Source: Hydrolagus affinis (Eukaryota). Taken from it: 64,000 bases of DNA. The notes below the pieces were generated by a model. That model worked only from the letters and a program-made list of their open reading frames with translations, made no database searches and had not been told where the DNA came from. Below, one piece after another: positions 1-38,275 of this stretch. How positions within the stretch are numbered: position 1 is the stretch's first letter; every line of letters starts with the position of its first letter. Both the position numbers and the translations under genes were made by a program. The DNA lies in NCBI GenBank assembly GCA_012026655.1, contig JAAILG010001574.1, positions 1 to 64,000 of the forward strand, read 5' to 3'.

Positions 1-490
1 CTGGTCACCTCCAGCAGTCTCGACGTCATGCTTCGCCACTGTCAAGCGCTGTGGGACACTACCTTGTGTGAGGAGCGCTATGTTAATGAAAGTATATATA
101 ACATATATAAAAGTAAAAATGTTTCGCTCACAAGAATATACAGTCAATTCACTTTACAATATATTCTGTGAAGCACTTCAAGATGTCTAGAAGATGTGAA
201 AAGTGCTATATCAAGTGCAAGTATTATTATTATTACTGTAGTTTGAGCAAGTTTGCATAGGTCAGTTGTATCTGATGCCAAGATTCATTACACCATCTAC
301 ATGTGAGCCTGAAGAGCCTGCTGAGCCAGTGTGCTAAATAGAAGGAAGCGTGATTGCATTCGAGTTGTGAAGATGTAACCACAGCAAACTGAGACACTAC
401 AGCCTGTGTATGTCTCACAGCTGACTGGCACACACACCCAAAGTGCTGACAGTGTTATTCTGGTCTGTCATTTTTTTTAATTGCTGGAAT

Positions 491-536
491 ACACAACACA
501 CACATACACACATGCACACATACACACATACACACA
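491..536. repeat. Imperfect (CA)n microsatellite
   Basis: acacaacacacacatacacacatgcacacatacacacatacacaca. Confidence 0.85.
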
Positions 537-3289
537 GAGTCCACGTTGTCTTTTCTCAGTGTGAGGTTTAATTGCATCTGATAATCCACGTGGAACAAAC
601 AGTCTGCAAACTGAGCTTCAAATTATATTTCTTGCACGTCGACCTCGGACGTGGGCCCGTTTCTGTCAGCCCACATCACAGGTCAAGCAGGCTCTCGGCC
701 ATTGATCTTGCTGTACCTCGAACACCCGTCAGCTTCAGTGTAAAGCCAGCGGACTGACTCCGTTTCCGTTAGTGGACGGTAACTTGCTATTTACAGCACA
801 ACTCCCACATGGATCATTCGAGAGGTCTACAACAATAGCAACAACTTCAACAACTTGCATTTTGTATAGCACTCTTCACATGGTGCAGAGTCCTGTGGTG
901 AACATGTATTACAGGGGAATTGGAGCGAGCTGCTGTTAGCACTCTGGCCCTGACTTGTTCCAAACAGCAGTGATGTGCAGCAGCTCTTGTTTTACACCAT
1001 CTGAAAAAGCAACAGAACAGTCTTCTCGCACTGGCAAGAGAGGTCCCAGACTCAACGTGCCAGGACTCCATACATGTCATCAATTAGCAAGTTAAAATAA
1101 TAATGAGTGCATTCTCATCATGTCAACACTCTGCCATGCTGGATCTAACACTTGCTGTTTGTTGACGCTGGGAACATTTTGTTCCGTGCTTATACTTTAT
1201 TGAGAAATCTTATTTATTTCGGTGCCCTCAAAGTTACATGTCTGATTTCTGGAGAAACTAAAATGGAATTTTTGATTTGTTTTGCGTAATCCGGCAGTGA
1301 CTGAGTGTCTGGTCTTGCGCGGTCTGGTATTGATTGGTTAATGGATGACGTTTGAGCATTGGGTGAGATAGACCTCTTCATCCTTGAAAGGCTAAAAATA
1401 CTGAATGTGATAAAGAAATAATTCCTGGAACAGTACTTGGAAATAAAATACAATTTACACTTATGCAGCGCCTTTCGAGTCAGAGGGACGTCACAGAGTG
1501 CTTTGCAAATCTGGCTACCGGTGGGAGCTGAGGGGAGTTGTGGAGGATAATGATGACCGAAAGCTAGGTTGATGGGGCAAGTTTTGAGAAATACCTTGAA
1601 TTAAGTGAGGCTGGCGTGTGTGTGGGAGATGACGCAGGCTGCGGAGTTCTGGAGAGTTTGCTGCCTAAGAGCTGAAGTGTCTGGCAAGCAGAGTGTTGGC
1701 ATCATCATTTGGATATAATAAGGCGTGAATGTGCTATTCAGTGTCAGTGGCCTTAGTAATAATGGACAAGGCATACAGTATTGCAGAGGTTCATTGTAAC
1801 TACTGTCATCTGTGTGTCTGAGATTTTTATGAAGCGTAAGACAAGAGAGTACAGGTTCAGGGATGTGAATGGCAAGTTTAAGACTGGCACCAGGAAATAT
1901 TTGCACAGCAGTTAATGAACACCTGGAGAGGGTTATCAGGGCTAATGGGAAGGTCAGGACACAGGAGTCATTTAAGAATGGATGGATGCTGGCATGGGCA
2001 GAAGGTAGAAATGGTATTTTAAAATAATGAGCTCAGAAGAAGGGCATTCTTCAAACAAACCTTTCTTGTATTCCCTGGCCATCCAGTGCTGATATGCAAG
2101 GTTTATTTAGTCGTGCGGCACGTTTGCTTGGCTTCAGAATCTCTAAAGATCTAATTTGGTGCCTGCAGGTTTTGAGAACTGAATAAGTCATGGCAGAAGA
2201 AGTCATGATTGTGATCACACAGGTAGCACAGTATTGAATGTGTGAACCCTGGATACAGGTTTGCATTTGTGAATCACTATCAAATTGCCTGAATTAAAGA
2301 AAGTGAGATCCGCTGAGACAGAAGAAATTGTGCGACTGGGTCATGGTAGAGTTTAATTACTGATGGGTTAGAGCCTGATGTGGGTGTCTGATGCTTGCAA
2401 ATACCTTTTGAAAGGCACGGCATCTTGGGATTATCATGTTGACAGGTACCCTGCAGGGCTCCGGTAACAGAGACACATTGATTCTGACCATTTGTTGGTT
2501 GTGGTGCAGTGGGATTGGGGATGTTTAATCTTAAAGCAGAATTAGTGAGTGGGTGGAGTGAATTCCTCGAGCTGTTTAATCTTTGATTTCTGTTTTCTGG
2601 GATTTTGTACCCGAGTCGGGCAAAGTTTGGCAACATTTTTTGTTTGGCAAAGTCAGGAGACTAGTTGTTGCACCGCAACCATCACCCTATCACTTCCATT
2701 TCAGGATACAGCTGTTCTGGCCATTCCCTAGTCTCTATTTCCCACGAGGATGTAAACCTCCACCAAGATTCTCAGCTGCTGTTAAAGTCTCCCCGAAAGG
2801 GCAGTATTCTGGATTTTGCCCTAACCAGTGTGTTAACTGGAAGCTTCCATATACAATTACGTACAACTGAGGGCAACCAAAGGTGACCTTCACAGGGTCG
2901 AAAAGAGGTTATCCTAAGCAGTGAATATGATAGGGTCATTTGCAGGTCACTGAACCCGCTGGCTGTCTGAAATTATTTCTGTGAGAAGCTCTCAGCAGAT
3001 GTGGATGGGCTACAGTTCTGTCCTTGGATCCAGGACTCTGTGTTGTAAACAACTGGGGAGAGAGGACATTTCATCTTTCACATCTATTCGTTCGCTGTCC
3101 TGAGTGCAAGTCTGATAGATAATCTAAAATACTGCATTCTTTCTCAAGGGGCATTAAAACTTTTGGGGGGGGCATATTTTGTGGAGTAACAATGCTATGC
3201 AACTGGTATGAGGACAGAGATTAGCCAACATTGAGTCCGGTGGTAGGCGAGAGGCAGAAATATAGATGCTGAGTTTTAGAAGGTAAACA

Positions 3290-17598: not shown

Positions 17599-17710
17599 AA
17601 TTGTTATTACCGTACAAATGTATCAAAGACTGCAAAGTATACACGGAAAGTATATATTTTTCGATCCCTTTCGCTTTCTTGATCGTGATCCCCCCCTCTG
17701 GTTTCCTCAG

Positions 17711-17893
17711 ATGATAGTGCCTCTGCAGCCAGCAGCATGGAGGTCACTGATCGGGTCGCTTCTCTGGAGCAGCGAGTGCAGATGCAGGAAGACGAGATCC
17801 AGCTGTTGAAGTCGGCGTTGGCTGATGTCGTCCGACGCCTGAACGTATCTGAGGAGCAACAGGCCATGCTCACCAGGAAAGGACCAACCAAAG
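17711..17893 (+). CDS. EML1: EML1 exon 2 (trimerisation coiled coil), 183 nt, phase 1-1
   Basis: ttcctcag|AT GAT AGT GCC...ATG GAG GTC ACT...CCA ACC AAA G|gtaaat; encodes DSASAASSMEVTDRVASLEQRVQMQEDEIQLLKSALADVVRRLNVSEEQQAMLTRKGPTK. Confidence 0.95.
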
Positions 17894-19180
17894 GTAAATC
17901 TGAGCGAGTACCACAGCAGGATGTGAATTAACCGGGCTGTCCATCATGTGTCTCTGTAGCCACCACCACATCGTACAAGGGCTCGTAAGTGTCCTTGACT
18001 TGACAAAGTGTGGGCTGGGTGCGAGTTAAATTCAAACACGTACGGTAGACAACCAGGAGAGACTCAGATATGTTAGGAACTAAACCAGCAGAAGTTCAGA
18101 AACATGTCAGTCATGATACTATAAGGGGTCAGGTACATGGCAAGTGCCAAGCCATCAGATGCTCAGGTATATACAGGTATGAGACCTTCAGGAATTGATC
18201 TCATTACCCGTCCCGTCCCCCCCCCCCCCACACACACACACACACACGATATGTGTTCTCACTCAGATCCATTAATTGGATGAATGTTAATGCGGTGACC
18301 AAGATTAGACTCTTGAATGGTCTTATCCTTCTTATCCTTCGGTATGCCTCTACACATATTTTGCTGTTATCGATAGACCATGAGTGACATCATGCCTCTT
18401 TATCTAATGCTGCCTATTCTCATTGGAGAGGTGTGTGAATCAAGCGGCTAAGTGATAAATGCAACATATTTCAGACCCTTGTCTATGAAACGAGAAATCT
18501 GTGGCAATTTAAAAAAAAAGTAACTTGTAAATAGCTCTGAATAGTAAAGACTAACCAATGAACCTTATCCTAATTACAGTCTTTTCTTAACTTAATTTAG
18601 TGAAATGCCTACCTTGGCCTCTGTGCTTAGCTTATCCACTGGTGGTAACTAATTTAATCCCAATTCCCTGCTTTTTCCCTTTATGTCGTTGCATTTGGGA
18701 ATATTTCTGTTGTCGTTTGATGACCACGCTGATGTTTTGATCAGTGCATCATTGTACAAAACCTACAATTAAAATATGTATGAAAGCGCTGTGTGAAATA
18801 CTGATTTTCAAAACTATCAATGTTACTATCCCTTTACACCAACATGGAGGACAGGACGCTGGATACGTGAGCATTCTTTGTAACAGTCAGTCGAAGTCTT
18901 TATCTTTCTGACCTGATGATTTTAATATCTTAGCATAAATAATGAAACCCAGTTGGAGCCAATGTGTGTTTTGTGGGGCTTTTATCCTTCCCTTACTGCT
19001 GAGATACTTTCAGTGGCTTATTTCTTTGATCTTTTTTTTAACTTGGATCATGCTGTTCGCTTTATAGTTCTGTTTTTTTTTGTTTGTATTTCAGTCACGT
19101 TTTCTGCATTTTATTTTCTCCTTCCCTTCTGTTTCTGCCTTTCTTCTTTTGCCAAATCTTCCCCGTTCTGGACTTTTTAG

Positions 19181-20893: not shown

Positions 20894-21659
20894 TTACAAT
20901 CTCTGAGATGCTGTAATCAATCAACAACCCTTGCACAAGACTTTGTATGGTGTCTCATCTTGATGGCTAAGTGGGTTAAGGTTCACCCCAATGTATTTCC
21001 ATAAGGCCATTCAGATCACATTCACTGTTGGCTTCTCTTAGTAAGGGTTGTGGAACATGTCTGCTAGTCCCAGAAAGGGAATGGAGGAAAAAATCAGATA
21101 GAATTCCCTGATCTTGAGATATCTTGATTCAGTGACTCCCACTGGTCATCTTGAAATATGGGGACCATGGATTTTATATTATTGCAGGTAATTAATTGTC
21201 AGCACCTTGGGATGTCCTCCCGATGTGAAAGGCGCTCTACAAATGTAATTTTGTTGTTGTGAAGTTTTCTCAGGTGTTTCAATGTGACCAGGTATTATTG
21301 AGCGATAATTATTCATTTGTTTCTTTCCAGCTCTCTTTTCAATAGGCGAGGCATCATAAAATGGCTTTTCTTATGATTCTTTCCCATGCAATTTTTGAGA
21401 GTGATCACTTTGAATTCTTGCTGCTCAACCCATGTCTTGGAACGAGTGCAATGCTGTTTTTGGAATAGAACCAACAGTGCTGCAAATCACCACAATGCAC
21501 CTTTTCCTCCCGTGCATTCATCTCTAAAGTGAATAGAGTCTGCGATGGAAGAGTGACACCAATGTATTTCAGAGATAATATTCAAAGATCCTTTACTTCG
21601 AGTGTAAAGTTCCCTCTGTTCATCCACAGATGGTAATATGTTCCCTGTTTGGTTTGCAG

Positions 21660-21792
21660 CGAGACCCTTAGTGCAAGCTCTACCATTGAGGCCTACAGTT
21701 AACAATGGAACTGTACTACCAAAGAAACCAAGTGGCTCTCTACCATCTCCATCTGGCATCAGGAAGGATAACACATCACCAGCAACCAAAAG
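21660..21792 (+). CDS. EML1: EML1 exon 3, 133 nt
   Basis: ttgcag|CG AGA CCC TTA...ACC AAA AG|gtgagc; ARPLVQALPLRPTVNNGTVLPKKPSGSLPSPSGIRKDNTSPATK. Confidence 0.93.
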
Positions 21793-24700
21793 GTGAGCAG
21801 CTACTGCCAACTGCAAAGCAACAGGTAACATTACTAGCCTTAACATATCAGGCACCTCTTACAATAGCCCATTACACCACCCAGAGCATCTATAACTCCA
21901 CTGTCCAAAATAACAACATTATTGCATTCTCTACAATGCCATTATTTTTGTCCTGATTTTATTTCAAATGTAGGAAAATTATTTTCCCAATATAGAAACT
22001 CCCGATGTCCACTTGTTATGTAGAGAAAGGAAAGAGAAGGAGATAGTCCAGGGACCCGTTGAGTCCACTCACAGAATAATTTCTCTCATTCTACCTCCAC
22101 CCACAACTGGAACCCCACCTCCCTCCTTCTGATGGTCACTCGGTCTCCTCCTCAGAAAGACGAAAAATTGAGAAAAAAATATCTGTTTTCAAATGGCCAT
22201 TTTAAATTCCTCTTTGACACTCAAAGGCAGTTGAGCTATCTCCGGGAGATAACTATCTCCTAGTCTAATTGAATCCATCCTTTTATAGTATTATTCCCCG
22301 CAGTTTTTACCTTGATTGTTTGCTTTGTTCTACCATTCAGTGTAATGTTAAACCTTTTCATGATCTTGCAGTTACAAATATTGGCCACAATCCCCATACT
22401 TGTGTTTGTTCATGGTAACTTTATTTATGATTAGTATAACTGAGACATTTCAATAATGCCTATGGCACTTTGTAGCTCTTTTTGTAATAAAAGATCTTCC
22501 GAGAGTGTCATAAATCTTGCAAGAATTCACAGTGTAATCTCAGAAAACACCAGGAATTTATAACAATGGCATTTTATGTGATGGTTTCATAACGTGTATC
22601 ATGTTTGCAGTTATGGGCACCAAAGTTCGATCAATGTTCGCTTATTCAGGTTTTCACTTTCCCAATGCGTTTGGGTCCGTGTTTCAAGCCTTGAATAAGA
22701 TTTGAAATGAGATTATAATAAATGAACAAAAAAGAGCAAAATTGCGTTTGCCGTGATTCACAGCACCCTTCTCCCCAGCTGATACTCCTGCCAGTCACCA
22801 GTGAAAGGCCAGTTTTCACAGAACTGAACTGTCAGCAATGAACACGGCAGGAAACAACAAAACTCACTTTGCCAGATCGAAGCTTCAGATCTTTTGTAGA
22901 GACGCAGTTTGAAACAGCCATTAGCTTGCCAAGGTTTTGTGTGTGTACAGACGAGACGGTCTGTGGGGGCAAACCCACAGCTTTAGTCAATGTGGATTGT
23001 TGGGCAAATAGTTTTTCGATTAAATCTGTATCACTATTTAATAGCTGTAATTACAGCTTCCTGCAAACATAATGACCACTGAGGGGAATAAGTGTATTGC
23101 TCACATCCAGGACGCAGTGGGCATAGTTACAACATCCCAACAAATGAATTGCTGAAAATACACCAGTATTTATTTTACAGTTGTTAGGTTGGTGGGAAAA
23201 GATCCCTCAGTAATACTGCTGTTTCTTGAATTAAATGGTGGTATTATTACTTTTTGCAATCGTCAGTTTTAACTCTTGAGCTGTTATCGCTAACCATTGA
23301 CTCAGTCGTCAAGCACTGATGAAAGGGATATGTGGTTAGCATCATGGACGCTTGTAGGACGTCCTTCCGACGTGAAAGGCGCTCTACAAATGTAATTTTG
23401 TTCTTGTTGCTGTGCGCAATTGGCAACCACATACCGCCCACAAAATACACAGAAAATCCATTTTACAACATATTCCGTGAAGCACTTTGAGATGTGATAA
23501 GGCGCTATATCAAATGCAAGGATTATTAAGCGCATTCCTCTGTATCTGAACTCTTTTTATTTGCTCCTTAAATGAGTTCCTTTAAGATAATCTGCTTGTA
23601 GGTTTCACTTTCTGCCGCTTTGCAGAGGTTTACAATGGTGCAGTGCAACATTTCCACACGATACAATTCTTTTACGACTCAATATATCTGTACGTTAAGA
23701 ATGGATGATTGATATTTTGTCCTCAAGTTTTTATTTTGGTTGACAGTTAGGGCTAAACTTGTTTGGCGTTTTCCCAAGAAGTCTATTCATGTTATTTACA
23801 TTGAGACGGGTATTCCCAGCTGCTTTGGACAGTGGGGTAGAACTTTAATGACTTTCTGATTATGTATGCAGAACAGCTTCGCCTGAATAATTCAAAGTTA
23901 AATTACTTTGAAAGTAGCTAACTACACGCACAAAAAAATGTCACAGTACCCACACATAACTGCAAAGATACCATTCTGGGTAGCAGTTCATGGATAATTT
24001 TCGAGTACAGTTAACTGCGACTTAACCGTCATTGTTAATATCTGAATAAGCTCTCAAAGAGACAAAAAAGAACTGCTCTTTCACGCCTGGTAGGATAGAC
24101 CTGTTTATGCAAACGTTCTTCTATCTGATCAGACGAATGTTACACAGATTAGCTGGGGTAGCACTGGGATGAAACTGACAAAGATTACATTGATGTGGAC
24201 TTGATCAGAGCCCGGCTTGCCACAAATTGCCAGTCAATGTAATATTTTGTGGCATTTAAATTAGGAGTCATCATTAGGGGCAATCTTACTTTGGCTAATT
24301 AGGTGAAATTGTTAAATACAGAGAGATTTTTGAGCATCATTAGCCAGTGTAAATTCATCTGCCATTAGCTCTAACATTTACATTTAAAGTGGAAGGGACT
24401 ACAAATCATTGGAACTATCATCTTTGTATGTGGAGTTCTGGTGATTAAAGCACTCGCTTCACAAGCGTGAGGACCTGGGTTCGATTCTCGGGCAGGGTGA
24501 AATGTTGGCCACATCTCCTTACACCACACACATACTTCTGTTTAGCTAGCATTAAGTAGAAATTTGGTTGTTAGTAGATTGATTTGCCAGCAAGGAACTA
24601 AAGGGTAGGTGATGGATAGGAAGCCCTGCGTCCTGTATACACACACACACAAACACATGACACATACCCCACTCACAAACACATAAACAAACTCACACGA

Positions 24701-28170: not shown

Positions 28171-30359
28171 ATCACTTCCCACATCACATTCTGCTAACAA
28201 GATGAATTCAAGATATACAAAGAACAATGAAATCCTCGTGTTCTCTCAGCACCATTTGGGGCAGAACTTCTTTAATTGGAGGCGTATATAAGTGTTATTC
28301 GCCATTCTTTAGACTTACAAAATAAAGCCTCTCATCCGTTACAAAGCAATCAATACATATTTCTCTTTTTCCGCACATCAGTAATCCAGAAAATTATTCA
28401 AAAGAATACTATTCCATGCAATTAAATGATGAATTGTCTTTTGTTCAAAAATAATGAAGATTTGCTTGAGGTGCTGCTAACAGTGAACATTAAATAATCT
28501 ATATATACAGATTGGTCTATCAGATATTAAGAGTGATTTTCCATTCAAAGAGAAAAGCTTTTACAGACTTAAATTATCTTTTTTATTTTTGTGCATGAAT
28601 TCTCACCACACTCAAGAATATGTCTCTTACAATTTGGCTTGGCTTCAAACAGTATTAGGTAAATCTGCTCCAATTCTGGGGGCAGTGATGTAAAAGATAT
28701 ATGAGTTTTACAGTAGTTATCGCTTGAACATGATCCCTGAAAGTTTAAATGAATCCAAGTCTTGGTCCCTGAAGGAGCATTCATCTCTTTGCCCAATTTT
28801 ATACAACCTCCTACATCACTGATTGTGGGATTTTCAATCAGACCTGGTCACAGAACCATTAATTCAACCAAGCTTTTAGGGTTTGTTATCAGTGCTGGTC
28901 TTCAAAACACGCTAAATGAGTTAATTAGACATGTCACAGGTCCTACTGTAGAAACTTGGAGGCTGCATTTTACACCGAATTAATGTGATCAGCTCTGCAT
29001 GCCTTTTGACTCATCATATAAAATATGCTCTTAGGTAAATAATTTAAAGAGTCTTCATTATCAGTTCTCAAATCCCTAATAGAATAGTTGATTGTTATTT
29101 CCTGCAAAAGTAACCATCTTAGAGAGCTGAAGAAGTTATAGAAGTTGCCATTTTATCTCTCTCTATCTATCTGTCAGATTAAGGGTAGTTTATTGCTTTG
29201 AGTTTACATTTGTTATGTCAGCCTGGTTCAGTTAATAGCACTCTCACCTCACATTCGCCCACAAATATACAGTCAATTCACTTTACAGTATATTCTGTGA
29301 AGCGCTTTGAGACGTCTAGAAGACGTGAAAAGCACTATATCAAAATGCAAGGATTATTATTATTATTAGTAGTAGTATTATTAGATAGTCTATGTTGACA
29401 CTCCAGTGCAATGCTGGGGGTATGTTGTTGCATTGTCAGAAGTGCTGTCCTCCAGATAAGACACTAAACCAAAGTTTTATCTACCCGTCCGTACAAGTTG
29501 ATATTCTTCTGGTATTCTGGCCAACAATCCTAAATTAAAATTGGTCATTTACTTCATCACTGTTTGTGGGTCGTTACCGTCTGCAAATTAGCTGCCGGGT
29601 TCACCTGCAAAATTATACACAGTTCCTACACTTTACAGACTCAAAGGGAGATCTTGAAAAAAATCTTCATGTCTGGGGGTTTAAAAAACAAGCTCTAGAG
29701 GTGAAAGGACAACAATCTAATATACTGACCAGCCTCCAACTGTGAATTTTTTTTGTTTGCAATATACAATAATAAGATGTCATTCTGCAATCCACCCCTT
29801 TTCATTTTCATGGCTGCACCCTACAATCGTTCGTATTATCAGGTCAGTTTCACACCTTATTTATTCCATGTGGTTAGAGTATAGGCAGTCAGTGTTCAGT
29901 TCGCATTCTGATTAATTATAATGTAAAGCAGGATTGTTATTAGAAATTAATGTTCAAACTAGTTTTGGACACTTTGTACAAGTATAACCAAAGATGAGTG
30001 TATTCAAGACTGTGTGGAAAATTAACTGTGTGTTTAATAAGAGGTGGCATTCTAATTTTTAAAGAGCTTCATAGTAGTTTTTATTGTTTCATGTTCTTCA
30101 CCCCCACCAAAAATCTACTTTGTTGACGTTGCAGCATAGAGTCATAGAATTATGGATTAGCGGGAACATTATTGCATAAAAGGAGGCCATTCAGCTCGTA
30201 GTTTGTGTTTGTACTGCGTTGATTTAGCCAAAAGAGCGATGATTTGCAGACAATTGGTTTTGGAAATGCTCAGTGGAAATTATACTAATTGACAGTATTA
30301 TGCTATGCCACTAGCTTGCCTCGAAGGAAGAGCTAACTCACCATTTTCTTTTGACCCAG

Positions 30360-30494
30360 TGGTGTGAAGAGAAGCAACTCCTCTGATCGGGTGCCACCAG
30401 CGGCTCGCCGAGAGAGCTTTGGAGATTCCAAAAACGTCAGGACACGTACAGGATCGACCAGCAGTGGTTCGAGTGGAAAGAAGACCAGTGATAG
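30360..30494 (+). CDS. EML1: EML1 exon 4 (Ser/Arg/Lys-rich basic region), 135 nt
   Basis: acccag|T GGT GTG AAG AGA...AGT GAT AG|gtacac; GVKRSNSSDRVPPAARRESFGDSKNVRTRTGSTSSGSSGKKTSD. Confidence 0.92.
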
Positions 30495-31613: not shown

Positions 31614-31910
31614 TGTGTCAGCCTTGTGCGGTGGTAGCACTCTCACTTGTGAGTCAGAAGGTTGTAGGTTCAAGCCCTACCTCAAAACTTGGAAATACAT
31701 AGTCTAAGCCGACGCTCCAATGCGGTGCTGGGGGTGGGGGGTGTTGCATTGTTGGAGTTGCTGTCCTTCGGATGAGACATGACATTAAACCAAAAGTCCC
31801 AACGACCTGCACAAGTGAATGTCAAAGATCCCACTATTTGAAAGAGAAAAGATTTATTCTGGTGTCCTGGCCAACAAATTCACCCCAAATAAAATCGGTC
31901 ATTCACCAGA
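31614..31910 (+). mobile_element. Older DeuSINE/SacSINE1-like element
   Basis: gtgtcagcc...ggtagcactctcac...gagtcagaaggttgtaggttcaagccc...tgcattgttggag...ctgtccttcggatgagac. Confidence 0.65.
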
Positions 31911-32050
31911 TGTTTATTAATACTATCATTTTAAAACAAACAATGAATTTTGTTTTAAAAAAGCAGGAGAATAATTTAAATCCATTGAAAGATAAGCCTC
32001 TACGCTATACTGAGATTGATGTTAGTCCTCTGTTGTTTCTATTTTTACAG

Positions 32051-32079
32051 CAAATCCAAGGAGCCTCTCTTCAATGCAG
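32051..32079 (+). CDS. EML1: EML1 exon 5, 29 nt, phase 2-1
   Basis: tttacag|C AAA TCC AAG GAG CCT CTC TTC AAT GCA G|gtgagt; KSKEPLFNA; needed to keep the exon 4 to exon 6 frame. Confidence 0.9.
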
Positions 32080-32446
32080 GTGAGTGGCATTCAGACTGCA
32101 TTGTTCATTTGTTAGGTTTCTGGGTGAGAATAATCATTTCAACTTTTGAAGAAATGTATGTTTTTGAGTTTAGGGTCTTTCATCCTATATGCCTTCAGAA
32201 ACCTTTACACTTTCAAACTCCATTTAAAGTCTTAATTTTGGGAACCATTGAATGGTTTCAGTCTAAATAGCCCAATAGTGTGTCATCCACATCAGGGCAA
32301 GAGAGAGAGATGTTTTGAACCTTTTGTGGTAACAAGTGATCCTAGTGATTGGATGTATGACTAAGAATTCTAGATGTAGATGATGAATAATAAATGAGTC
32401 ACTCTACGACTGTGCCAATGTACCCTTTTTTTATTTTCCTTAATAG

Positions 32447-32478
32447 ACCGAAAGCACAGCCACTATGCAATTTGGCAT
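32447..32478 (+). CDS. EML1: Candidate alternative exon 5b, 32 nt, phase 2-1 (RPKAQPLCNLA)
   Basis: ttttttattttccttaatag|A CCG AAA GCA CAG CCA CTA TGC AAT TTG GCA T|gtaagt; same phases as exon 5 and a loosely similar peptide. Confidence 0.5.
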
Positions 32479-33146
32479 GTAAGTGCTTTTTGGAGTGTTT
32501 TGCCCTGTTTCTCTCTCCCTTCATCCTTCACTTGCTGCTTGTTTGCAGCTAGGAATGTCTCATTTTATTGCCTAAAACCACTCCATGTTGCAGGTTCTAA
32601 CAAAAGGGGCATTGAGATAGCCTCCTTTCCTCATAATTCTCAGTAGGCAAAAATGCCCTGGCAACTCAGGTAATCAATGTATTCACTTGTGGGGCTCGCA
32701 ACAACCGAATGAGAGAGATTACATTCAACAGTGAGAAGAGATGCAGTTTTAGAAATGACTGGACTTTAGTTTCCTCCATAAAGTTTGAAATCAGTATTTA
32801 CATCCAGACCAGAGTGCTTCTCTCTGTATATACACAGTGAGTCTCCAAGGGAGACTGTGGGCGAAACAACACAAATGACTTAAATATTGAGCACTGAGGA
32901 AAATGTTCTTCACAATTCCCCCATTAAATACCAATGCTGAAGGGATAAATTCATTGATTGGACTGGAATCAGAAGTGCAAAGTTTCGGAAGTTTATCTGT
33001 GACTGTGTTTCTATAAAAATTGTTTTTAATTTTTAACCTATTTTGCCTTCTGGAATTAAAAAAACAAAAACAAAATATTCAATTCAGTTTACGTTTTTTT
33101 TGTGGTGTAGGGTGAGGGACTAATCAGATTTTCTCCCAGAGGTATT

Positions 33147-33439
33147 ATAATATTAATAATAATCTTTGCATTTGATACAGTGCTTTTCGCGTCTTCTAGA
33201 CGTCTCAAAGCACTTCACAGAATATACTGTAAAATGAATTGACTGTATATTTGTCGGCGAAACGCATATAGCAGTGTCCCTTAAACAGTCATGGATTGAA
33301 ATGACCAATTTATTATTGATTTTTTTCAAGGGTTTATTGTCAGGTGTGTGGAATAAGGAAACTTGCTCAAGGTTTTGGAATTAAACCCAGGTCTCTCACT
33401 TGGAAGGCGAGTGGTCTAACCACTGAGCTACAGGACTCC
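33147..33439 (-). mobile_element. Same SINE family
   Basis: Reverse-complement copy with head and (taa)n tail. Confidence 0.85.
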
Positions 33440-34609
33440 ACACTTTCGCCAGATTCCAGTCACTTTCTGGTACCATGCCCAATACTGGCCATTATTCCTG
33501 TCTAAGCAGTTCACATTGACTAGCTGATTGATAATCGAGAGATCAAAGCTGAACCCAGTTCAATCTTTGGCAGACCGACACAGGGGCACTTTCTACTATT
33601 GTACCATGTAGAAATCAGGAGTGGGGACCCTGGCTAATTTCTCCTTCTTAGCCCAGGGGTATTCATGCTATTCTGATACACATCAAAGCTCTCAATAAGA
33701 ACTAGCCTAAAATTGAGACGTCCAGAATCGTGCTTTATTTTGGCTTCACTTAAAAAACATCCACCCTGCTTGTAATATATTAATTGTATGGTCAGAGAGA
33801 AGTACGGTTGGTGAAATTTAGTTTTGAAACATTATTTGTGAAGTCTCAATCTACTGGAGTTGATAGAGAAAATAATTAATTAGTAACATGGCAACAGTAT
33901 TAGCACAAGTCGATCATTGATGAATCCCTTCAATTACCCATCCAACTTCCTAACAGATTCCCTTAAAACATTTAACTTGTCATGCTTTGACCCTGAATCA
34001 CTTGTGTCTTCAATAAAAGGGGAGCTGAACCAAAACCACATCCTTTAGATTCGACTGTTCTCTGTCTCTTGAGTTTCTCACTCTCGTTGAGTATCTCACT
34101 TTCTATATCTCTCTCTTTATCTCTGATGATCTATCTCATTATCTTATCGTTGTGCTGCTGGTACAAAACCAATCCAGTTGTGTGTGTGAGGTTACTAAAA
34201 TGCAAGTACATCTCATTCCTTGGAGTCTCGTACCCATGAGTATAGCTTCACACGTAAACACAACTGGATGCCCCATTACCTGTCTAATTGTATTGTCTAT
34301 CCTGGTGGAATCCCAGCTGTTTGGATGTGTGAAACTCAATAGAAGCAGACTATGAGGTCCTCAGCCTCTAATGACAGGCTCACATCTGCCCTGGCTCCTT
34401 TCTGACAATTTCCAGGAACCATGTTTGAAGCTCTTTATTGGTGCAAAAGCAATTGAGGGATGTTTGAAATGTTTTGTCCTGTGAGGGGTTAGTTAGAAGC
34501 TGTAAATGAACGATGGCTGCACAGCCGCTAGCATAGGTGTTAGGTGAAGCTGACTTTCCTCATACACATCTTTATCTAGCACTTCTATCTCTGTCTCTGT
34601 AATCACAAG

Positions 34610-34636
34610 GGAAGCGCCGTGTGACATACTGCCAAG
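34610..34636 (+). CDS. EML1: Candidate 27-nt microexon, phase 1-1 (GKRRVTYCQ)
   Basis: cttctatctctgtctctgtaatcacaag|GG AAG CGC CGT GTG ACA TAC TGC CAA G|gtaggt; symmetric with a good donor. Confidence 0.6.
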
Positions 34637-35801
34637 GTAGGTCTCATTTGTGCACCGTTCTAGCTCTCTGAAGCCTCCCGTTCCCCCAGCCACCCAGACT
34701 TAATCACATGTACTCACAGTCCGCTTCTGCAAGCATGCTTGCCTTCACTTTGAAAATACTAAACGTTCCAAATGATTTCCAGCCAAAACTTCCCACTGCA
34801 TTAATAAGTCTTTCCTGTGAGCGTAACCTCCCTGAATTTTAAATATTTCAGCTCTTCTGTCATTCTGCGGAAATTGAATTAATGGAGTGGGTTCAGGACT
34901 TGTGTTGTCTTTATGTCTCCATGGCTTGTGAGTCGTGTGACTGAAGTACTATATGAGGTATAGACAGGGAGCTATACAACATATAATGTAGTGCTGATTT
35001 GCCTAATAACTTGCTACACATATTAACTAGCATTTGAAGACAAAATAGACGCTTTACGCTGTAGTGTGAGTGTGTTCTACGTCTGCAGTGGTTTGTCAAA
35101 ATAGACGTCTTGATGTTTAAAAATGATTTTAAATGATTAGAAATAGAAATTGAACTGTAAAACAGATGTGAATAATGACCTTGCAAATGTCACATAATTC
35201 CGAGCAAACAAAATACAAATTTGATCTCCGCTTGCCACAATCTATTTTTCAAACAGTAAATCTTGTGCAATGTTTGTCGGGTGTAAAATTAATTTGGGAG
35301 AATGTGAGACTTAGGGTGTCAAACCGAAGAATTTTATACATTGCACATTGTGCTAACTTGGAGATATAGACAACAGCAGACGGACTTCAACTAACCTGTT
35401 GGGCAGCTCTTGTTTTCAGCTGGACTTTCTAATCATTCTAATAGCATTGTTCATTTAGCATTCCCATCTGGCCAAAACAGTCATCAGACTCTACATTCCC
35501 ACTTATTATCACTGTCTTCTCTATTATACTGTGCATTGCTGCTTAGTATAGCTATCAAACTGTACAATAGAATAGATCATTGTCGATTCGATTTTAGTAA
35601 CGGCAGTGATATAAGTAATCTTTATGGTGAAGAGAATGTTGAAACTCCTAGTTCTATATTAGTAAGAACTGAGATTAGCTGCTCTTTATATTTTCGTTCC
35701 TTAAAAACCAAAAATTGAAACCACCGCCAATCATTACATTTTGTAATCATTTTATCACTTCTCCCCCTCCGATCGTCCATATCCGTGACAACGCCACATA
35801 G

Positions 35802-36091
35802 TAACGATGCAGATATATCTGAGTCAGCCTCCAAAACTGATTGGTTCTTCTGAGAGCAAGGTTGACCCCCTTGGTCTAATGTTGAGCCAGCCATCATCTG
35901 GCCAAGAATCTGGAGCCACCTCAGTTAATGCTGTTGGGAAATCTGGAATTCGCAAGACACCCTCTCTGCCCTCGTCGTTTACAAACAGCCTGAGCCAGAC
36001 ATCAATAGTCAGTCCCAGTGACATGTCAAGGTCTCCAAGTTTTAAGAGCCAAATAAAATCTCCTAATCAGTACTTCCAGATCTGTTTTTAA
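35802..36091 (+). CDS. EML1: Candidate alternative terminal exon of EML1 (VTMQIYLSQPPKLIGSSE...KSPNQYFQICF*)
   Basis: acatag|TA ACG ATG CAG in phase 1, matching the exon 5 and microexon donors; 290-nt Ser/Pro-rich open frame ending TAA at 36089-36091; AATAAA at 36431. Confidence 0.65.
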
Positions 36092-36430
36092 ACTCCTTTT
36101 CTTATTATGTCCGTGATGGACTTGAGGGGGAATGCATCTGTCTTGCCTGTCCGCCATATATACATGTACGTCTTCTCATGTCTCTGTCTTTATTTTCTTT
36201 GGCAAATTTTCTGTGTGTTGCATTTTTAATTCTTATTTTTGGGTGTGTACTGTATGTTGGTTAAATAGCATGTTAGGCCACTACTGCTGTCTGGTCATGT
36301 GGAATGTCTCTTTGTTGCACTTGGGGATAAAACTGCATCCTTTCCTTTTTTTCTTTCTACGTTGTTTAACATTAACACCATTCACTGCATGTAACAACCC
36401 TGTATGTCAACGTTTTATGCTCTTATCAGT

Positions 36431-36436
36431 AATAAA
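36431..36436 (+). terminator. Intronic polyadenylation signal for the short isoform
   Basis: AATAAA 340 nt after the alternative stop, followed by GT/T-rich sequence (ttttggtgttggctgt). Confidence 0.5.
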
Positions 36437-36599
36437 GACAATTTTAAATTGAATTGAATTTTGGTGTTGGCTGTACTTCAATCTCTTTCTCTCTCTCTTT
36501 CTCTCTTTTCCCCTCTCATCTCGGATAACCTTATCCAATGTTCATTCAGTAGCAAACCATTCGCGGAGCGAGCATTCATTTTTTTCCTTTAACTTTTAG

Positions 36600-36729
36600 A
36601 AGAAGGATACGTGAAAATGTTCCTGCGAGGTCGACCGATCACCATGTACATGCCCCAGGAATTTAGAGAAAACTATAGCTTGGAAAATAAAGCTGAACTC
36701 CCATCCAAAAAGCTGAAGTTGGACTGGGT
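36600..36729 (+). CDS. EML1: EML1 exon 6 (HELP motif start), 130 nt
   Basis: ttttag|AA GAA GGA TAC GTG AAA ATG TTC CTG CGA GGT CGA CCG...GAC TGG GT|gtatcctt. Confidence 0.95.
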
Positions 36730-38275
36730 GTATCCTTCATTCTGTGGACTTGGCATATTTTCCGTATTGTGTGCTATCTATTTCTATCATTCTTTGCAAT
36801 GTCATTCAGGATCCTCATCCTCGCATTCAAATCCCTCCACGGGCTGGCCTCACCCTACCTTGGGATATCCTATAGATTTCCTCCCGATGCGCAATAATTT
36901 TGTATTGTACATCCATGGCTTCCTTAAACCCACTACCCAGGCCATACCTGTCACTTTGCTAACAACAGCTTGTTACATGCCCCCTGGCTGATCAGCCACA
37001 CCATCACTGGATGAGCTTTCAGTCATTCTGCCTATACTCTGTGAAACTCCATCCCAGAAAGAATCTTTCCACCTCACCCCCTCCCTCCCTACTTTGAAAG
37101 CCCACGTTAAGTTCTATCTCCTCAAATGCGCTTTTGGTCCCCCAAGCCTTCTTCCCCATCCTCCTGGCTTCCCTCTGCTCCCTTTCCCCAACCACACCAC
37201 CACCCCACCTCACTCCAGCTTGGATGCCCAATGAGCTGTGAAAAGTACTCTGAAATGTCCTCCAAACAGGCGTGAAAAGCGCTGCATAAATATAAATTGT
37301 TGCTGTGGACACATCAGCAGTGAACAAAAAACATCAACAGTTGAGAAATGGAAAATGGTTTACTAAATTGAATGCAGTGCCTAGATTTTTCCTCCTCCAC
37401 TTCCCCCTGCCCACCCATGTATTCTGCAAGATAACTTTTGTGAACAGACACTATTTTTATACACCCCTTTGTGTTCAATATCATGGTTACCCAGCGTTTG
37501 TTTTAAAAAGAGCTTGTCTGACTAGTTTTGGAAAAAAATAATCAGTTTAGATTTAGTGCAGTAAGTTACATGGATCTCTGTTTCAGGAATGTTTTAAACA
37601 AACCATTGGTGCATTGAAAAATCCGACAGTAATAATGTGCAACTGATTATTTTGGACACTACATATTTTATTACTGCAGCTCTTGTTTCAACTACAGGAA
37701 GCTGCTAGTTTATTTAGCTCCTATTATATAAATAGTTAAGGCCCTCAAGAGAATGGCAAGCAGTTGCAATGTAGATTGATGCAGTCAGCACCTCCTGGTG
37801 AAAATCGTGTTGCAGCACTTAATAATAATAATAATAATAATAATCCTTGCATTTGATACAGCGTTTTTCACATCTTCTACATACCTCAGAGTGCTTCACA
37901 GAATATACTGTAAAGTGAATTAACTGTATATTTTTGGGTGAAACACAGCTGCCAATTGCGCACAGCAATATCCCACAAACAGTCTTGCAATTGAAGTGAC
38001 CAATTTATTATTGTTTTATTTCTTGAGGGATTATTATCAGGCATGTGGAGTAAGGAAACTTGCCCCAGGTTTTGCCCTGCCGGGAATCGAACCCAGGTCT
38101 CTTGCTTTGGAGGCGAGTGCTCTAAACCACTGAGCTACAGGACTCCACTTCATCCACAATGCAAGGTTTAGAGAACTATGACTGCATGTAAAGCACTAAA
38201 ATCCGCTATATCTTGGCCTACGCAGTATGACGTTTCAGCCGTTATCTCAGTGCACGTCCTTGACAAACCTGCCAG
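36730..38275 (+). other. U12-type (minor spliceosome) GT-AG intron
   Basis: 5' splice site GTATCCTT; branch site TCCTTGAC at 38257-38264, ending 11 nt before the exon; no polypyrimidine tract. Confidence 0.9.
37820..38146 (-). mobile_element. Same SINE family, inside the U12 intron
   Basis: (taa)n tccttgcatttgatac...gggaatcgaacccagg...gagctacaggactcc. Confidence 0.88.

What the first reader, a model, noticed from the sequence alone, without database searches (positions are those of the whole stretch)
35802..36455. Intronic terminal exon predicting a short EML1 isoform without the TAPE domain
Seen: just upstream of exon 6 there is a phase-1 acceptor (acatag|TA ACG ATG CAG), a 290-nt Ser/Pro-rich open frame ending ...KSPNQYFQICF*, an AT/GT-rich UTR-like stretch and AATAAA at 36431. 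Exons 2-3-4-5, the 27-nt microexon and this exon give 256 aa counted from the ATG at 17737 (247 aa without the microexon). Established: the EML1-4 N-terminal coiled coil trimerises and, with the basic region, binds microtubules, while the HELP/WD40 TAPE domain binds soluble tubulin. Inference: this isoform would keep trimerisation and lattice binding but lose TAPE, so it could modulate or act dominantly on EML trimers through a different C-terminal tail. I loosely recall similar '...QYFQIC' ends in predicted fish EML1 proteins, but this is unverified.
Basis: partly seen in the sequence, partly recalled or inferred. Interest (0 to 1): 0.8.

Follow-up and report, generated by a model that had tools for sequence, protein, structure and literature searches.

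The report
EML1 short-isoform (CNG-modulin-type) terminal exon
This is a real, evolutionarily conserved alternative last exon of the EML1 gene that gives a short protein without the propeller domain, the same kind of protein that fish vision researchers already know as CNG-modulin.

Summary
An AG acceptor at 35802, a 287-nt open frame to a stop at 36089-36091, and AATAAA at 36431 lie between a 29-nt exon and a 27-nt microexon on one side and the HELP exon (36600) on the other.

The open frame alone is not beyond chance: five frames of 95 codons or more follow an AG in the same intron. Homology is what settles it.
- The 95-aa peptide finds 9 proteins among 1.84 billion. In 8 of them the match runs to the last residue.
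- Follow-up searches brought the stored set to 179 proteins. Of these, 177 end in the same C-terminal motif, 167 carry the microexon directly before the tail, and only one has a HELP motif.
- They come from teleosts, gar, birds and a lizard. Most are named EML1 and one is named CNG-modulin.
- Some come from short spliced run-assembly contigs, so they are very likely transcripts.

RNA reads laid on this window were inconclusive: even sense-strand intron depth, no drop after the poly(A) signal, and the junction rows were hidden by a repeat.

Verdict: a new member of a known kind. Its functional inference is untested, and it missed the published role as a Ca-dependent cone CNG-channel modulator.

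None concern other DNA.

The parts
17711..17893 (+). EML1 exon with the ATG at 17737; encodes the N-terminal coiled coil (trimerisation domain)
   Evidence: tblastn of gar short EML1 P0135 residues 22-85 onto 17707-17898, 91% identity, E 8e-31. Splice sites read.
21660..21792 (+). EML1 exon, start of the basic Ser/Pro-rich linker
   Evidence: P0133 residues 53-97 onto 21659-21793, 84% identity. Splice sites read.
30360..30494 (+). EML1 exon, Ser-rich basic linker
   Evidence: P0135 residues 127-171 onto 30358-30492, 64% identity. Splice sites read.
32051..32079 (+). 29-nt exon ending in phase 1, with a strong donor gtgagt; the branch point of the isoform choice
   Evidence: Sequence. Donor score 12.2. 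RNA depth 11-12 at 32063 against 1 at 32101 in X6/X7 (table 3).
34610..34636 (+). 27-nt microexon (phase 1 to phase 1) that precedes the tail in nearly all homologues
   Evidence: Sequence. Donor score 10.1. P0133 residues 166-176 onto 34603-34635. 167 of 179 stored homologues have the equivalent residues directly before the tail.
35782..35801 (+). Weak acceptor region of the alternative last exon (AG at 35800-35801)
   Evidence: Pyrimidine fraction 0.55 in the 20 nt before the AG, against 0.70-0.85 for the five other acceptors checked.
35802..36091 (+). Coding part of the alternative last exon with its stop (36089-36091); encodes the 96-residue tail
   Evidence: phmmer: 9 hits at E 5e-7 to 9e-4 among 1.84e9 proteins, 8 of them matching to their last residue. 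tblastn of P0135 residues 191-283 onto 35801-36088, 48.5% identity, E 4e-19. No donor scoring above 4 inside the frame.
36092..36455 (+). Predicted 3' UTR (about 340-365 nt)
   Evidence: Runs from the stop to about 20 nt after the hexamer. The end is not confirmed by reads (table 6: none).
36390..36404 (+). Two UGUA motifs 27-41 nt upstream of the hexamer
   Evidence: TGTA at 36390 and 36401. Their role as upstream poly(A) elements is inferred from general knowledge.
36431..36436 (+). AATAAA poly(A) signal
   Evidence: It is the only AATAAA or ATTAAA between the stop and the HELP exon.
36459..36474 (+). GU-rich stretch downstream of the predicted cleavage site
   Evidence: Sequence printed; G+T fraction 0.62 over 36437-36486. 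Its role is inferred.
36600..36737 (+). HELP-motif exon, the competing downstream acceptor that leads to the long TAPE-containing EML1
   Evidence: Sequence. Acceptor pyrimidine fraction 0.85. RNA depth 20.8 and 10.6 in X6 and X7.

Best explanation
Window 35802-36455 is the alternative last exon of EML1.

How the choice works: when the donor of the 27-nt microexon (34636), or of the 29-nt exon (32079), is spliced to the weak acceptor at 35802 and the transcript is cleaved about 20 nt after the AATAAA at 36431, the mRNA ends before the HELP exon.

What it encodes: a 256-aa protein, or 247 aa without the microexon, counted from the ATG at 17737. It would be longer if an upstream first exon outside the window is used. 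The protein has:
- the EML1 coiled-coil trimerisation domain;
- the basic Ser/Pro-rich linker;
- a 96-residue disordered tail with two conserved short motifs, one at its start (continuous with the microexon) and one at the extreme C-terminus.

It is the orthologue of the short EML1 proteins annotated in gar, birds and a lizard. It is the co-orthologue of the teleost proteins of about 300 aa, one of which NCBI names CNG-modulin.

Shown here: the anatomy, the exon-by-exon colinearity, the conservation of the tail and of the stop position, and the absence of HELP/TAPE in the homologues.

Inferred: that the exon is used in this species; the cleavage site; that the protein trimerises and binds microtubules; and that it modulates cone cGMP-gated channels as reported for teleost CNG-modulin.
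For: 1; 9 hits among 1,835,955,588 proteins (E 5.1e-7 to 8.9e-4, 38-48% identity). In 8 of 9 the match ends at the hit's last residue.
2; the hits read exon 5, then the microexon, then the tail. Gar P0135 (283 aa, 'EMAL1 protein, partial') and bird P0133 (261 aa) are complete short EML1 proteins.
3. P0135 maps colinearly onto the window in six pieces that end at 36088.
4; 231 of 286 and 201 of 335 candidates score E <= 0.01 with the tails of P0008 and P0003. [quoted passage not shown] P0149 is named CNG-modulin.
5; of 179 stored proteins, 177 end in the same four residues, 167 have the microexon directly before the tail, 146 have the coiled-coil motif (median length 305 aa), and only 1 (P0004) has a HELP motif.
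6. P0117 (281 aa, 1285-nt contig), P0043 (309 aa, 1620-nt contig) and P0003 (1569-nt contig) are intron-less across several exons. I infer they are transcripts.
7; no usable donor inside the frame. AATAAA with UGUA upstream and a GU-rich stretch downstream.
8. (quick tree, 90 columns): the window's tail groups with the gar and sauropsid EML1 tails (SH-aLRT 94).
9. Literature, passages read: CNG-modulin is encoded by zebrafish eml1 (PMC8370914). The trimerisation domain plus basic region suffice for microtubule binding (PMC4761370).
Against: 1. No RNA proof in this genome. In one search the two poly(A) single-cell runs, X6 and X7, give even sense-strand depth over the whole intron.
   - Depth over 35741-36408 averages 5.6 (X6) and 3.4 (X7). 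The 13 intron bins 33570-35740 average about 4.1 and 1.3.
   - The bin after the predicted cleavage site (36409-36575) stays at 4.2 and 4.4. The HELP exon bin has 20.8 and 10.6.
   - Table 6 lists no pile-up of read ends.
   - No junction rows for 32079 or 34636 to 35802 were visible. The canonical 32079 to 36600 junction was not visible either, because 15 repeat-derived rows were shown and 156 were not.
2. The acceptor is the weakest of six checked.
3. The window departs from the family at 2 of the 12 invariant columns of alignment A1 (the equivalents of P271 and Y283 of P0135). It also departs at two nearly invariant microexon positions, H188 and K190. A1 is dominated by teleosts.
4. No protein of this species with this tail is in the 5.8-billion collection (one search found none; none appears in the rows listed).
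5. The protein NCBI names CNG-modulin belongs to the teleost group with a divergent N-terminus, not to the group nearest the window. Transfer of function is therefore by co-orthology only.
Confidence: 0.88

Rival explanations
1. Relic exon. The sequence descends from the conserved EML1 alternative last exon but is no longer used in this lineage, and only the long isoform is made.
For: The acceptor is weak. The window departs at otherwise invariant or nearly invariant positions of the tail end and the microexon. No read ends appear at the predicted poly(A) site, and there is no drop in depth after it.
Against: All 96 codons are open and the stop is at the conserved position. The three conserved blocks of the tail are kept: 48% identity to gar over 89 aligned columns. 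The poly(A) signal has typical flanking elements. The tissues of the RNA runs are coded, and the teleost homologue is reported from cones, so absence in unrelated cells would be expected.
Confidence: 0.07
2. Poison (NMD) cassette exon. The exon is spliced in and out using a donor downstream of the stop, so that inclusion destroys the long mRNA and no protein is made from it.
For: GT sites after the stop exist at 36166, 36243, 36252 and 36402, with donor scores of 4.3-6.2. RNA depth continues from the exon to the HELP exon.
Against: Those donors score far below the gene's real donors (10.1 and 12.2). Protein-level conservation up to a fixed C-terminus in 177 of 179 homologues, with short complete proteins annotated in many species, is not expected of a non-coding poison exon.
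Confidence: 0.03
3. Chance open frame in an intron, with a fortuitous AG and AATAAA.
For: Open frames of this length after an AG occur 5 times in the same intron, and AATAAA occurs 58 times on the + strand of the window.
Against: E 5e-7 against 1.84e9 proteins, with matches ending at the C-terminus in 8 of 9 hits. Exon-by-exon colinearity with gar and bird short EML1, E 4e-19 for the tail within the window.
Confidence: 0.01

Closest known systems
CNG-modulin (striped bass) / zebrafish eml1 product
   Same: P0149 (turbot, 307 aa), which NCBI names CNG-modulin, has the same build: coiled coil, Ser/Pro-rich linker, microexon residues, and a tail ending in the same C-terminal motif. Reviews state that CNG-modulin is encoded by zebrafish eml1 and regulates the cGMP dependence of cone CNG channels in a Ca-sensitive manner (PMC8370914; PMC8861151).
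   Different: The window's tail is only 29-42% identical to teleost tails. It groups with gar and sauropsid EML1 tails rather than with the 169 teleost rows. The teleost CNG-modulin-type proteins have a divergent N-terminus (135 of 175 tree rows).

The original papers (Rebrik 2012, Korenbrot 2013) are not held. I therefore could not see the bass sequence, nor what those authors say about gene structure. The figure of 301 aa for bass CNG-modulin is recalled, not seen.
Annotated short EML1 proteins of gar (P0135, 'EMAL1 protein, partial', 283 aa), birds (P0133 Leptosomus discolor 261 aa; P0134 Cyanoderma ruficeps 267 aa) and a lizard (P0012 Lerista edwardsae 365 aa)
   Same: They have the canonical EML1 N-terminus, 83-92% identical to the window's exon at 17711-17893, and the same exon order. 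The tail is 43-48% identical.
   Different: The window ends in F where they all end in Y. It also differs at two microexon positions, and it has a longer middle part of the tail.
EML4 part of the EML4-ALK variants 3 and 5 (trimerisation domain plus basic region, no TAPE)
   Same: The same parts of an EML protein are retained. [quoted passage not shown]
   Different: That is a somatic oncogenic fusion of a paralogue. This is a germline-encoded natural isoform with its own conserved tail.
EML2 splice variants that lack the coiled coil
   Same: Alternative processing removes one of the two functional halves of an EML protein (PMC4761370).
   Different: This is the reciprocal case: those keep TAPE and lose the trimerisation domain.

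Membership tests
Short EML1 / CNG-modulin-type isoform | The same gene encodes, upstream, the EML1 N-terminal coiled coil and the basic linker | tested here: met
   P0135 residues 22-85, 84-126 and 127-171 map to 17707-17898 (91%), 21659-21790 and 30358-30492 (64%).
Short EML1 / CNG-modulin-type isoform | A tail exon lying between the small phase-1 exon or microexon and the HELP exon, in a compatible phase | tested here: met
   Exon lengths add up to 768 nt, which is 256 codons.
Short EML1 / CNG-modulin-type isoform | Conserved start of the tail, continuous with the microexon residues | tested here: met
   V, T and L of the tail start are kept. The microexon is kept with 2 substitutions at nearly invariant positions.
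Short EML1 / CNG-modulin-type isoform | Conserved extreme C-terminus with the stop at the same position | tested here: met
   the stop position is identical. 10 of the 12 invariant columns of A1 are kept. The last residue is F instead of Y.
Short EML1 / CNG-modulin-type isoform | No HELP/TAPE domain in the product | tested here: met
   The stop at 36089-36091 precedes the HELP exon at 36600. 178 of 179 stored homologues lack the HELP motif.
Short EML1 / CNG-modulin-type isoform | The mRNA is made in this species: junctions into 35802 and a poly(A) end near 36455 | tested here: inconclusive
   sense-strand reads cover the exon at about intron level. No ends are listed. The junction table was swamped by the repeat at 33069-33569.
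CNG-modulin (function) | Ca-dependent shift of the cGMP sensitivity of cone CNG channels; expression in cones | not testable with these tools
   Known only from literature on teleosts. The originals are not held.
EML trimerisation-domain proteins | The N-terminal coiled coil forms a trimer and, with the basic region, binds microtubules | not testable with these tools
   The AlphaFold2 monomer model of P0135 gives one confident helix, residues 34-77. Trimerisation is known for EML2 and EML4 (PMC4761370).

The most novel reading that the evidence does not exclude
The CNG-modulin-type protein is not a separate 'fish photoreceptor protein'. It is the ancestral TAPE-less isoform of EML1 in bony vertebrates.

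On this reading it is an obligate coiled-coil trimer that binds microtubules through the trimerisation domain plus basic region. It can co-assemble with full-length EML1 and uses the two conserved tail motifs to dock other partners, such as the CNG channel beta subunit.

If mammals also keep the exon, the mouse alleles used to test 'EML1 as the CNG-modulin homologue' would leave this isoform intact. Those alleles are described as loss of full-length EML1 and a stop in exon 18. The negative result in mouse photoreceptors would then not settle the question.
Probability: 0.2. Interest if true: 0.6.

Novelty: new member of a known kind. Interest (0 to 1): 0.38.

Why it matters
It places an isoform choice in EML1 just before the HELP exon. 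One gene would make two products:
- a microtubule and tubulin-binding propeller protein, mutated in neuronal heterotopia according to the papers read;
- a short trimerising protein whose teleost counterpart tunes cone light sensitivity.

The microtubule literature and the photoreceptor literature I could read do not refer to each other's view of this protein. Mouse studies describe only forms of 783-814 aa (PMC7101416). They tested the CNG-modulin idea with a mutant described as losing the full-length protein (PMC8861151).

Knowing the exact exon makes isoform-specific deletion and detection possible. For this genome the practical value is annotation: two coding exons and a poly(A) site inside what would otherwise be called an intron.

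Tried and rejected
- **Cassette-exon reading: rejected.** No GT with a donor score above 4 lies inside the frame.
- **Chance ORF: rejected** by homology, although the ORF length alone is unremarkable.
- **Known domain in the tail: none.** Pfam found nothing in the window peptide or in P0149. P0135 gave only sub-threshold coiled-coil hits in its N-terminus.
- **Folded tail: not supported.** The AlphaFold2 model of P0135 with 127 aligned sequences gives mean pLDDT 55. Only helix 34-77 is confident, and the tail blocks score 41-67.
- **Close relatives of the window peptide among proteins of 52-166 aa: none.** 3 candidates, 0 scored.
- **ESM Atlas search with the bird tail: no usable hit**.
- **First exon of the long N-terminus** (first 22 residues of P0135): no credible match anywhere in the window.
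- **Junction evidence: not obtained.** The single read-laying run spanned 31900-36900 so as to hold both donors and both acceptors. The high-copy repeat at 33069-33569 filled the joints and loose-ends tables.
- **Literature on an EML1 alternative last exon or intronic polyadenylation:** one search (165 papers held at least 2 of 4 terms, 10 listed) listed no paper holding 'EML1'. This does not show the idea is absent from print. Supplements were not opened. The two original CNG-modulin papers, which may describe the gene structure, are not held.
- **Careful tree:** it did not finish in 300 s, so the quick tree was used. It has 90 columns and many open forks, and I take from it only the grouping of the window with the gar and sauropsid rows.

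Full report
**What is in the sequence**

The window carries a vertebrate EML1 gene on the + strand. One search shows open stretches with the coiled-coil exon, the HELP exon and many propeller exons. There are no N runs.

- an AG at 35800-35801;
- an open frame from 35802 to 36088, with codons starting at 35804;
- a stop at 36089-36091;
- AATAAA at 36431-36436.

The upstream exons, read from their splice sites, are:
- 17711-17893, with the ATG at 17737;
- 21660-21792;
- 30360-30494;
- 32051-32079 (29 nt, donor gtgagt, ends in phase 1);
- the 27-nt microexon 34610-34636 (donor gtaggt, phase 1 to phase 1).

I added exon lengths as numbers only: 157+133+135+29+27+287 = 768 nt, which is 256 codons, or 247 without the microexon. 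Searches used the terminal-exon peptide alone, and colinearity was tested exon by exon.

**Is it more than chance?**

The open frame alone is not.
- In the same intron, five frames of 95-107 codons follow an AG.
- The + strand of the window has 27 stop-free stretches of 96 or more codons.
- AATAAA occurs 58 times on the + strand.

The evidence is homology. phmmer with the 95-aa peptide against 1,835,955,588 representative proteins gave 9 hits (E 5.1e-7 to 8.9e-4, 38-48% identity). In 8 of the 9 the match runs to the very last residue of the hit.

The ninth hit, P0004 from Coregonus (648 aa), reads the tail on into the HELP motif without a stop. I take this to be a gene-model artefact. That is an inference.

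The sequences show the same order as in the window: the small exon, then the microexon residues, then the tail.

**Who has it**

One search gives the sources:
- rainbow trout, P0002;
- milkfish, P0008 (289 aa; NCBI name 'putative protein TPRXL', UniRef name EML1);
- a skink, P0012;
- several unnamed run-assembly contigs.

Two further searches used the tails of P0008 and P0003. They gave 231 proteins at E <= 0.01 among 286 candidates, and 201 among 335, with the best 120 listed each time. [quoted passage not shown] One, P0149 from turbot (307 aa), is named CNG-modulin.

Non-teleost members are:
- alligator gar, P0135 (283 aa);
- the skink.

| Feature | Count of 179 |
|---|---|
| End in the same four residues | 177 |
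| Microexon residues directly before the tail (164, plus 3 with one substitution) | 167 |
| Small exon joined directly to the tail | 2 |
| Intron-like sequence before the tail (unspliced or genomic contigs) | 7 |
| Lack the tail-start pattern | 3 |
| Coiled-coil motif (lengths 134-359, median 305 aa) | 146 |
| HELP motif | 1 (P0004) |

These proteins were selected by similarity to the tail, so the motif itself is not independent evidence. Its position at the protein's end is independent, and so is the absence of HELP.

The length filter of the search for homologous proteins excluded proteins above about 420-505 aa. Long proteins carrying the tail internally would therefore not have been seen. 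One search had no length filter, and it found only P0004 of that kind.

**Colinearity and placement**

tblastn of the gar protein P0135 against the window maps it in six colinear pieces:

| P0135 piece | Window coordinates | Identity |
|---|---|---|
| 1 | 17707-17898 | 91% |
| 2 | 21659-21790 | not recorded for this range |
| 3 | 30358-30492 | 64% |
| 4 | 32049-32081 | 73% |
| 5 | 34603-34635 | 64% |
| 6 | 35801-36088 | 48.5%, E 4e-19 |

In an alignment of 17 tails, the window is 48% identical to gar, 43-46% to the birds and the skink, and 29-42% to teleosts.

A quick maximum-likelihood tree was built on the tails. It had 175 rows; P0004, P0009, P0013, P0021 and P0176 were left out. It used 90 columns and midpoint rooting, and the careful search did not finish. 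The tree puts the window in a six-row group with gar, the birds, the skink and P0003 (SH-aLRT 94), apart from 169 teleost rows.

**Transcript-level support in other species**

P0117 (281 aa, on a 1285-nt contig) and P0043 (309 aa, on a 1620-nt contig) run from the N-terminus through all exons to the tail without introns. P0003 (1569-nt contig) is spliced across the last four exons. Contigs of that size holding five or six exons without introns must come from spliced RNA.

**RNA in this genome**

The look-up of sequencing runs listed no holder recorded as RNA. It added three raw poly(A) single-cell runs. The one read-laying run (window 31900-36900) showed the following.

- **X5** is DNA of a near-identical genome. 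One 3416-nt contig is colinear over 33418-36840, with 52 other letters and 31 gap letters.
- **X3** is a guessed RNA run of a relative. It has a 1305-nt contig starting at 36598, at the HELP exon, and nothing on 35741-36408. At 93% identity even in the HELP exon, the faster-evolving tail could simply fall under the 92% threshold.
- **X6 and X7** have nearly all non-repeat reads with the first mate on the - strand. In most stranded libraries this means sense to EML1.

| Region | X6 depth | X7 depth |
|---|---|---|
| 13 intron bins, 33570-35740 (mean) | about 4.1 | about 1.3 |
| Candidate exon, 35741-36408 (mean) | 5.6 | 3.4 |
| Bin after the predicted cleavage site, 36409-36575 | 4.2 | 4.4 |
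| HELP exon bin | 20.8 | 10.6 |
| Position 32063 in the 29-nt exon | 11 | 12 |
| Position 32101, 22 nt into the intron | 1 | 1 |

Table 6 lists no pile-up of read ends.

The joints table showed 15 rows, all from the repeat at 33069-33569, and 156 rows were not shown. Neither the proposed junctions nor the canonical one could be seen.

My reading is that in those cells the short isoform is at most minor and the reads look like pre-mRNA. The test is undecided. It is also uninformative if the isoform is confined to photoreceptors, as reported for teleosts.

**Splicing and 3'-end signals**

- The acceptor at 35802 has the lowest pyrimidine content of six acceptors checked, 0.55 against 0.70-0.85. 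This fits a regulated alternative exon.
- No GT with a donor score above 4 lies within the frame. GTs after the stop score 4.3-6.2, against 10.1 and 12.2 for the gene's real donors. This speaks against a cassette or poison exon.
- The AATAAA at 36431 is the only AATAAA or ATTAAA between the stop and the HELP exon.
- It has UGUA at 36390 and 36401 and a GU-rich stretch at 36459-36474. Their roles are inferred from general knowledge of vertebrate poly(A) sites.

**The protein**

- Pfam finds nothing in the tail.
- AlphaFold2 on P0135 with 127 aligned homologues gives one confident helix, residues 34-77 (the coiled coil). Confidence is low elsewhere. The best tail block is the microexon plus tail start, at pLDDT 56-67.
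- Alignment A1 has 12 invariant columns, all in the tail start and the last 13 residues. There are further nearly invariant positions in the coiled coil, the microexon and a central proline-containing motif.
- The window keeps 10 of the 12 invariant columns. It differs at the equivalents of P271 and Y283 of P0135, and at two nearly invariant microexon positions.

I read the tail as a disordered region carrying short linear motifs.

**What is known**

From passages read:
- A review of zebrafish photoreceptors states that CNG-modulin regulates the cGMP dependence of cone CNG channels in a Ca-sensitive manner, that it is encoded by eml1 in zebrafish, and that knockdown reduces cone light sensitivity (PMC8370914).
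- Mouse papers call EML1 the mammalian homologue of CNG-modulin. [quoted passage not shown]
- Another paper says the role in mammalian cones is unknown (PMC6829558).

The two original papers (Rebrik et al. 2012; Korenbrot et al. 2013) are not held. The following is recalled, not seen:
- a length of 301 aa for bass CNG-modulin;
- binding to the N-terminus of the channel's beta subunit;
- 'an ancient gene present in all vertebrates'.

I cannot say what those authors wrote about the exon structure. Supplements were closed.

**Verdict**

The exon is real in the evolutionary sense. It belongs to a known kind, the TAPE-less, CNG-modulin-type short EML1 protein.

For this genome it is an unlisted member. 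No protein with this tail from this species appeared.

Its idea of action on EML trimers is a reasonable hypothesis that remains untested. The published function of the teleost counterpart is different and was missed.

Use of the exon in this species, the cleavage site, and any function are inferred.

Noticed in passing
36738-36745: The donor after the HELP exon reads GTATCCTT, which I recall as the consensus of U12-type (minor) introns. It scores -24 on a U2 donor matrix.
   Followed up: partly
33069-33569: A very high-copy repeat in the intron. Summed depths were 1.7e6 to 8.0e6 in the DNA run and about 390-1830 (both strand columns summed) in the RNA runs. It filled the joints and loose-ends tables of the reads call.
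   Followed up: no
P0149, P0106, P0051 and others against P0117, P0138 (stored proteins): Teleosts seem to have two loci with this tail. One has the canonical EML1 N-terminus (P0117, P0138). The other has a divergent N-terminus (135 of 175 tree rows) and includes the protein named CNG-modulin.

Many of the second group carry unrelated automatic names, such as 'putative protein TPRXL', 'extensin-like' and 'uncharacterized protein LOC...'. This hints at stand-alone genes without TAPE exons. It was not checked on DNA.
   Followed up: partly
P0004 (Coregonus, 648 aa); P0021 (177 aa, unnamed contig): These are the only 2 of 179 stored proteins that do not stop after the conserved C-terminal motif. 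P0004 continues into the HELP and propeller sequence. P0021 continues into unrelated sequence.
   Followed up: no
36598-36729 (run X3, record 8): A 1305-nt contig of a related organism starts exactly at the HELP exon boundary. A contig break there would fit alternative upstream junctions in that organism (table 8).
   Followed up: no
36743-36900: RNA depth is zero in both raw-read runs just after the HELP exon, while the preceding intron is covered throughout at 1-10. The DNA run's depth is raised there (194 against 65-113), so a repeat filter may be the cause.
   Followed up: no
36052-36057: A second AATAAA lies inside the coding part of the exon, 37 nt before the stop.
   Followed up: no
36474-36517: A CT-rich low-complexity run lies directly after the predicted cleavage region. 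The reads tool skipped it as a repeat, which blurs any read-end signal there.
   Followed up: no
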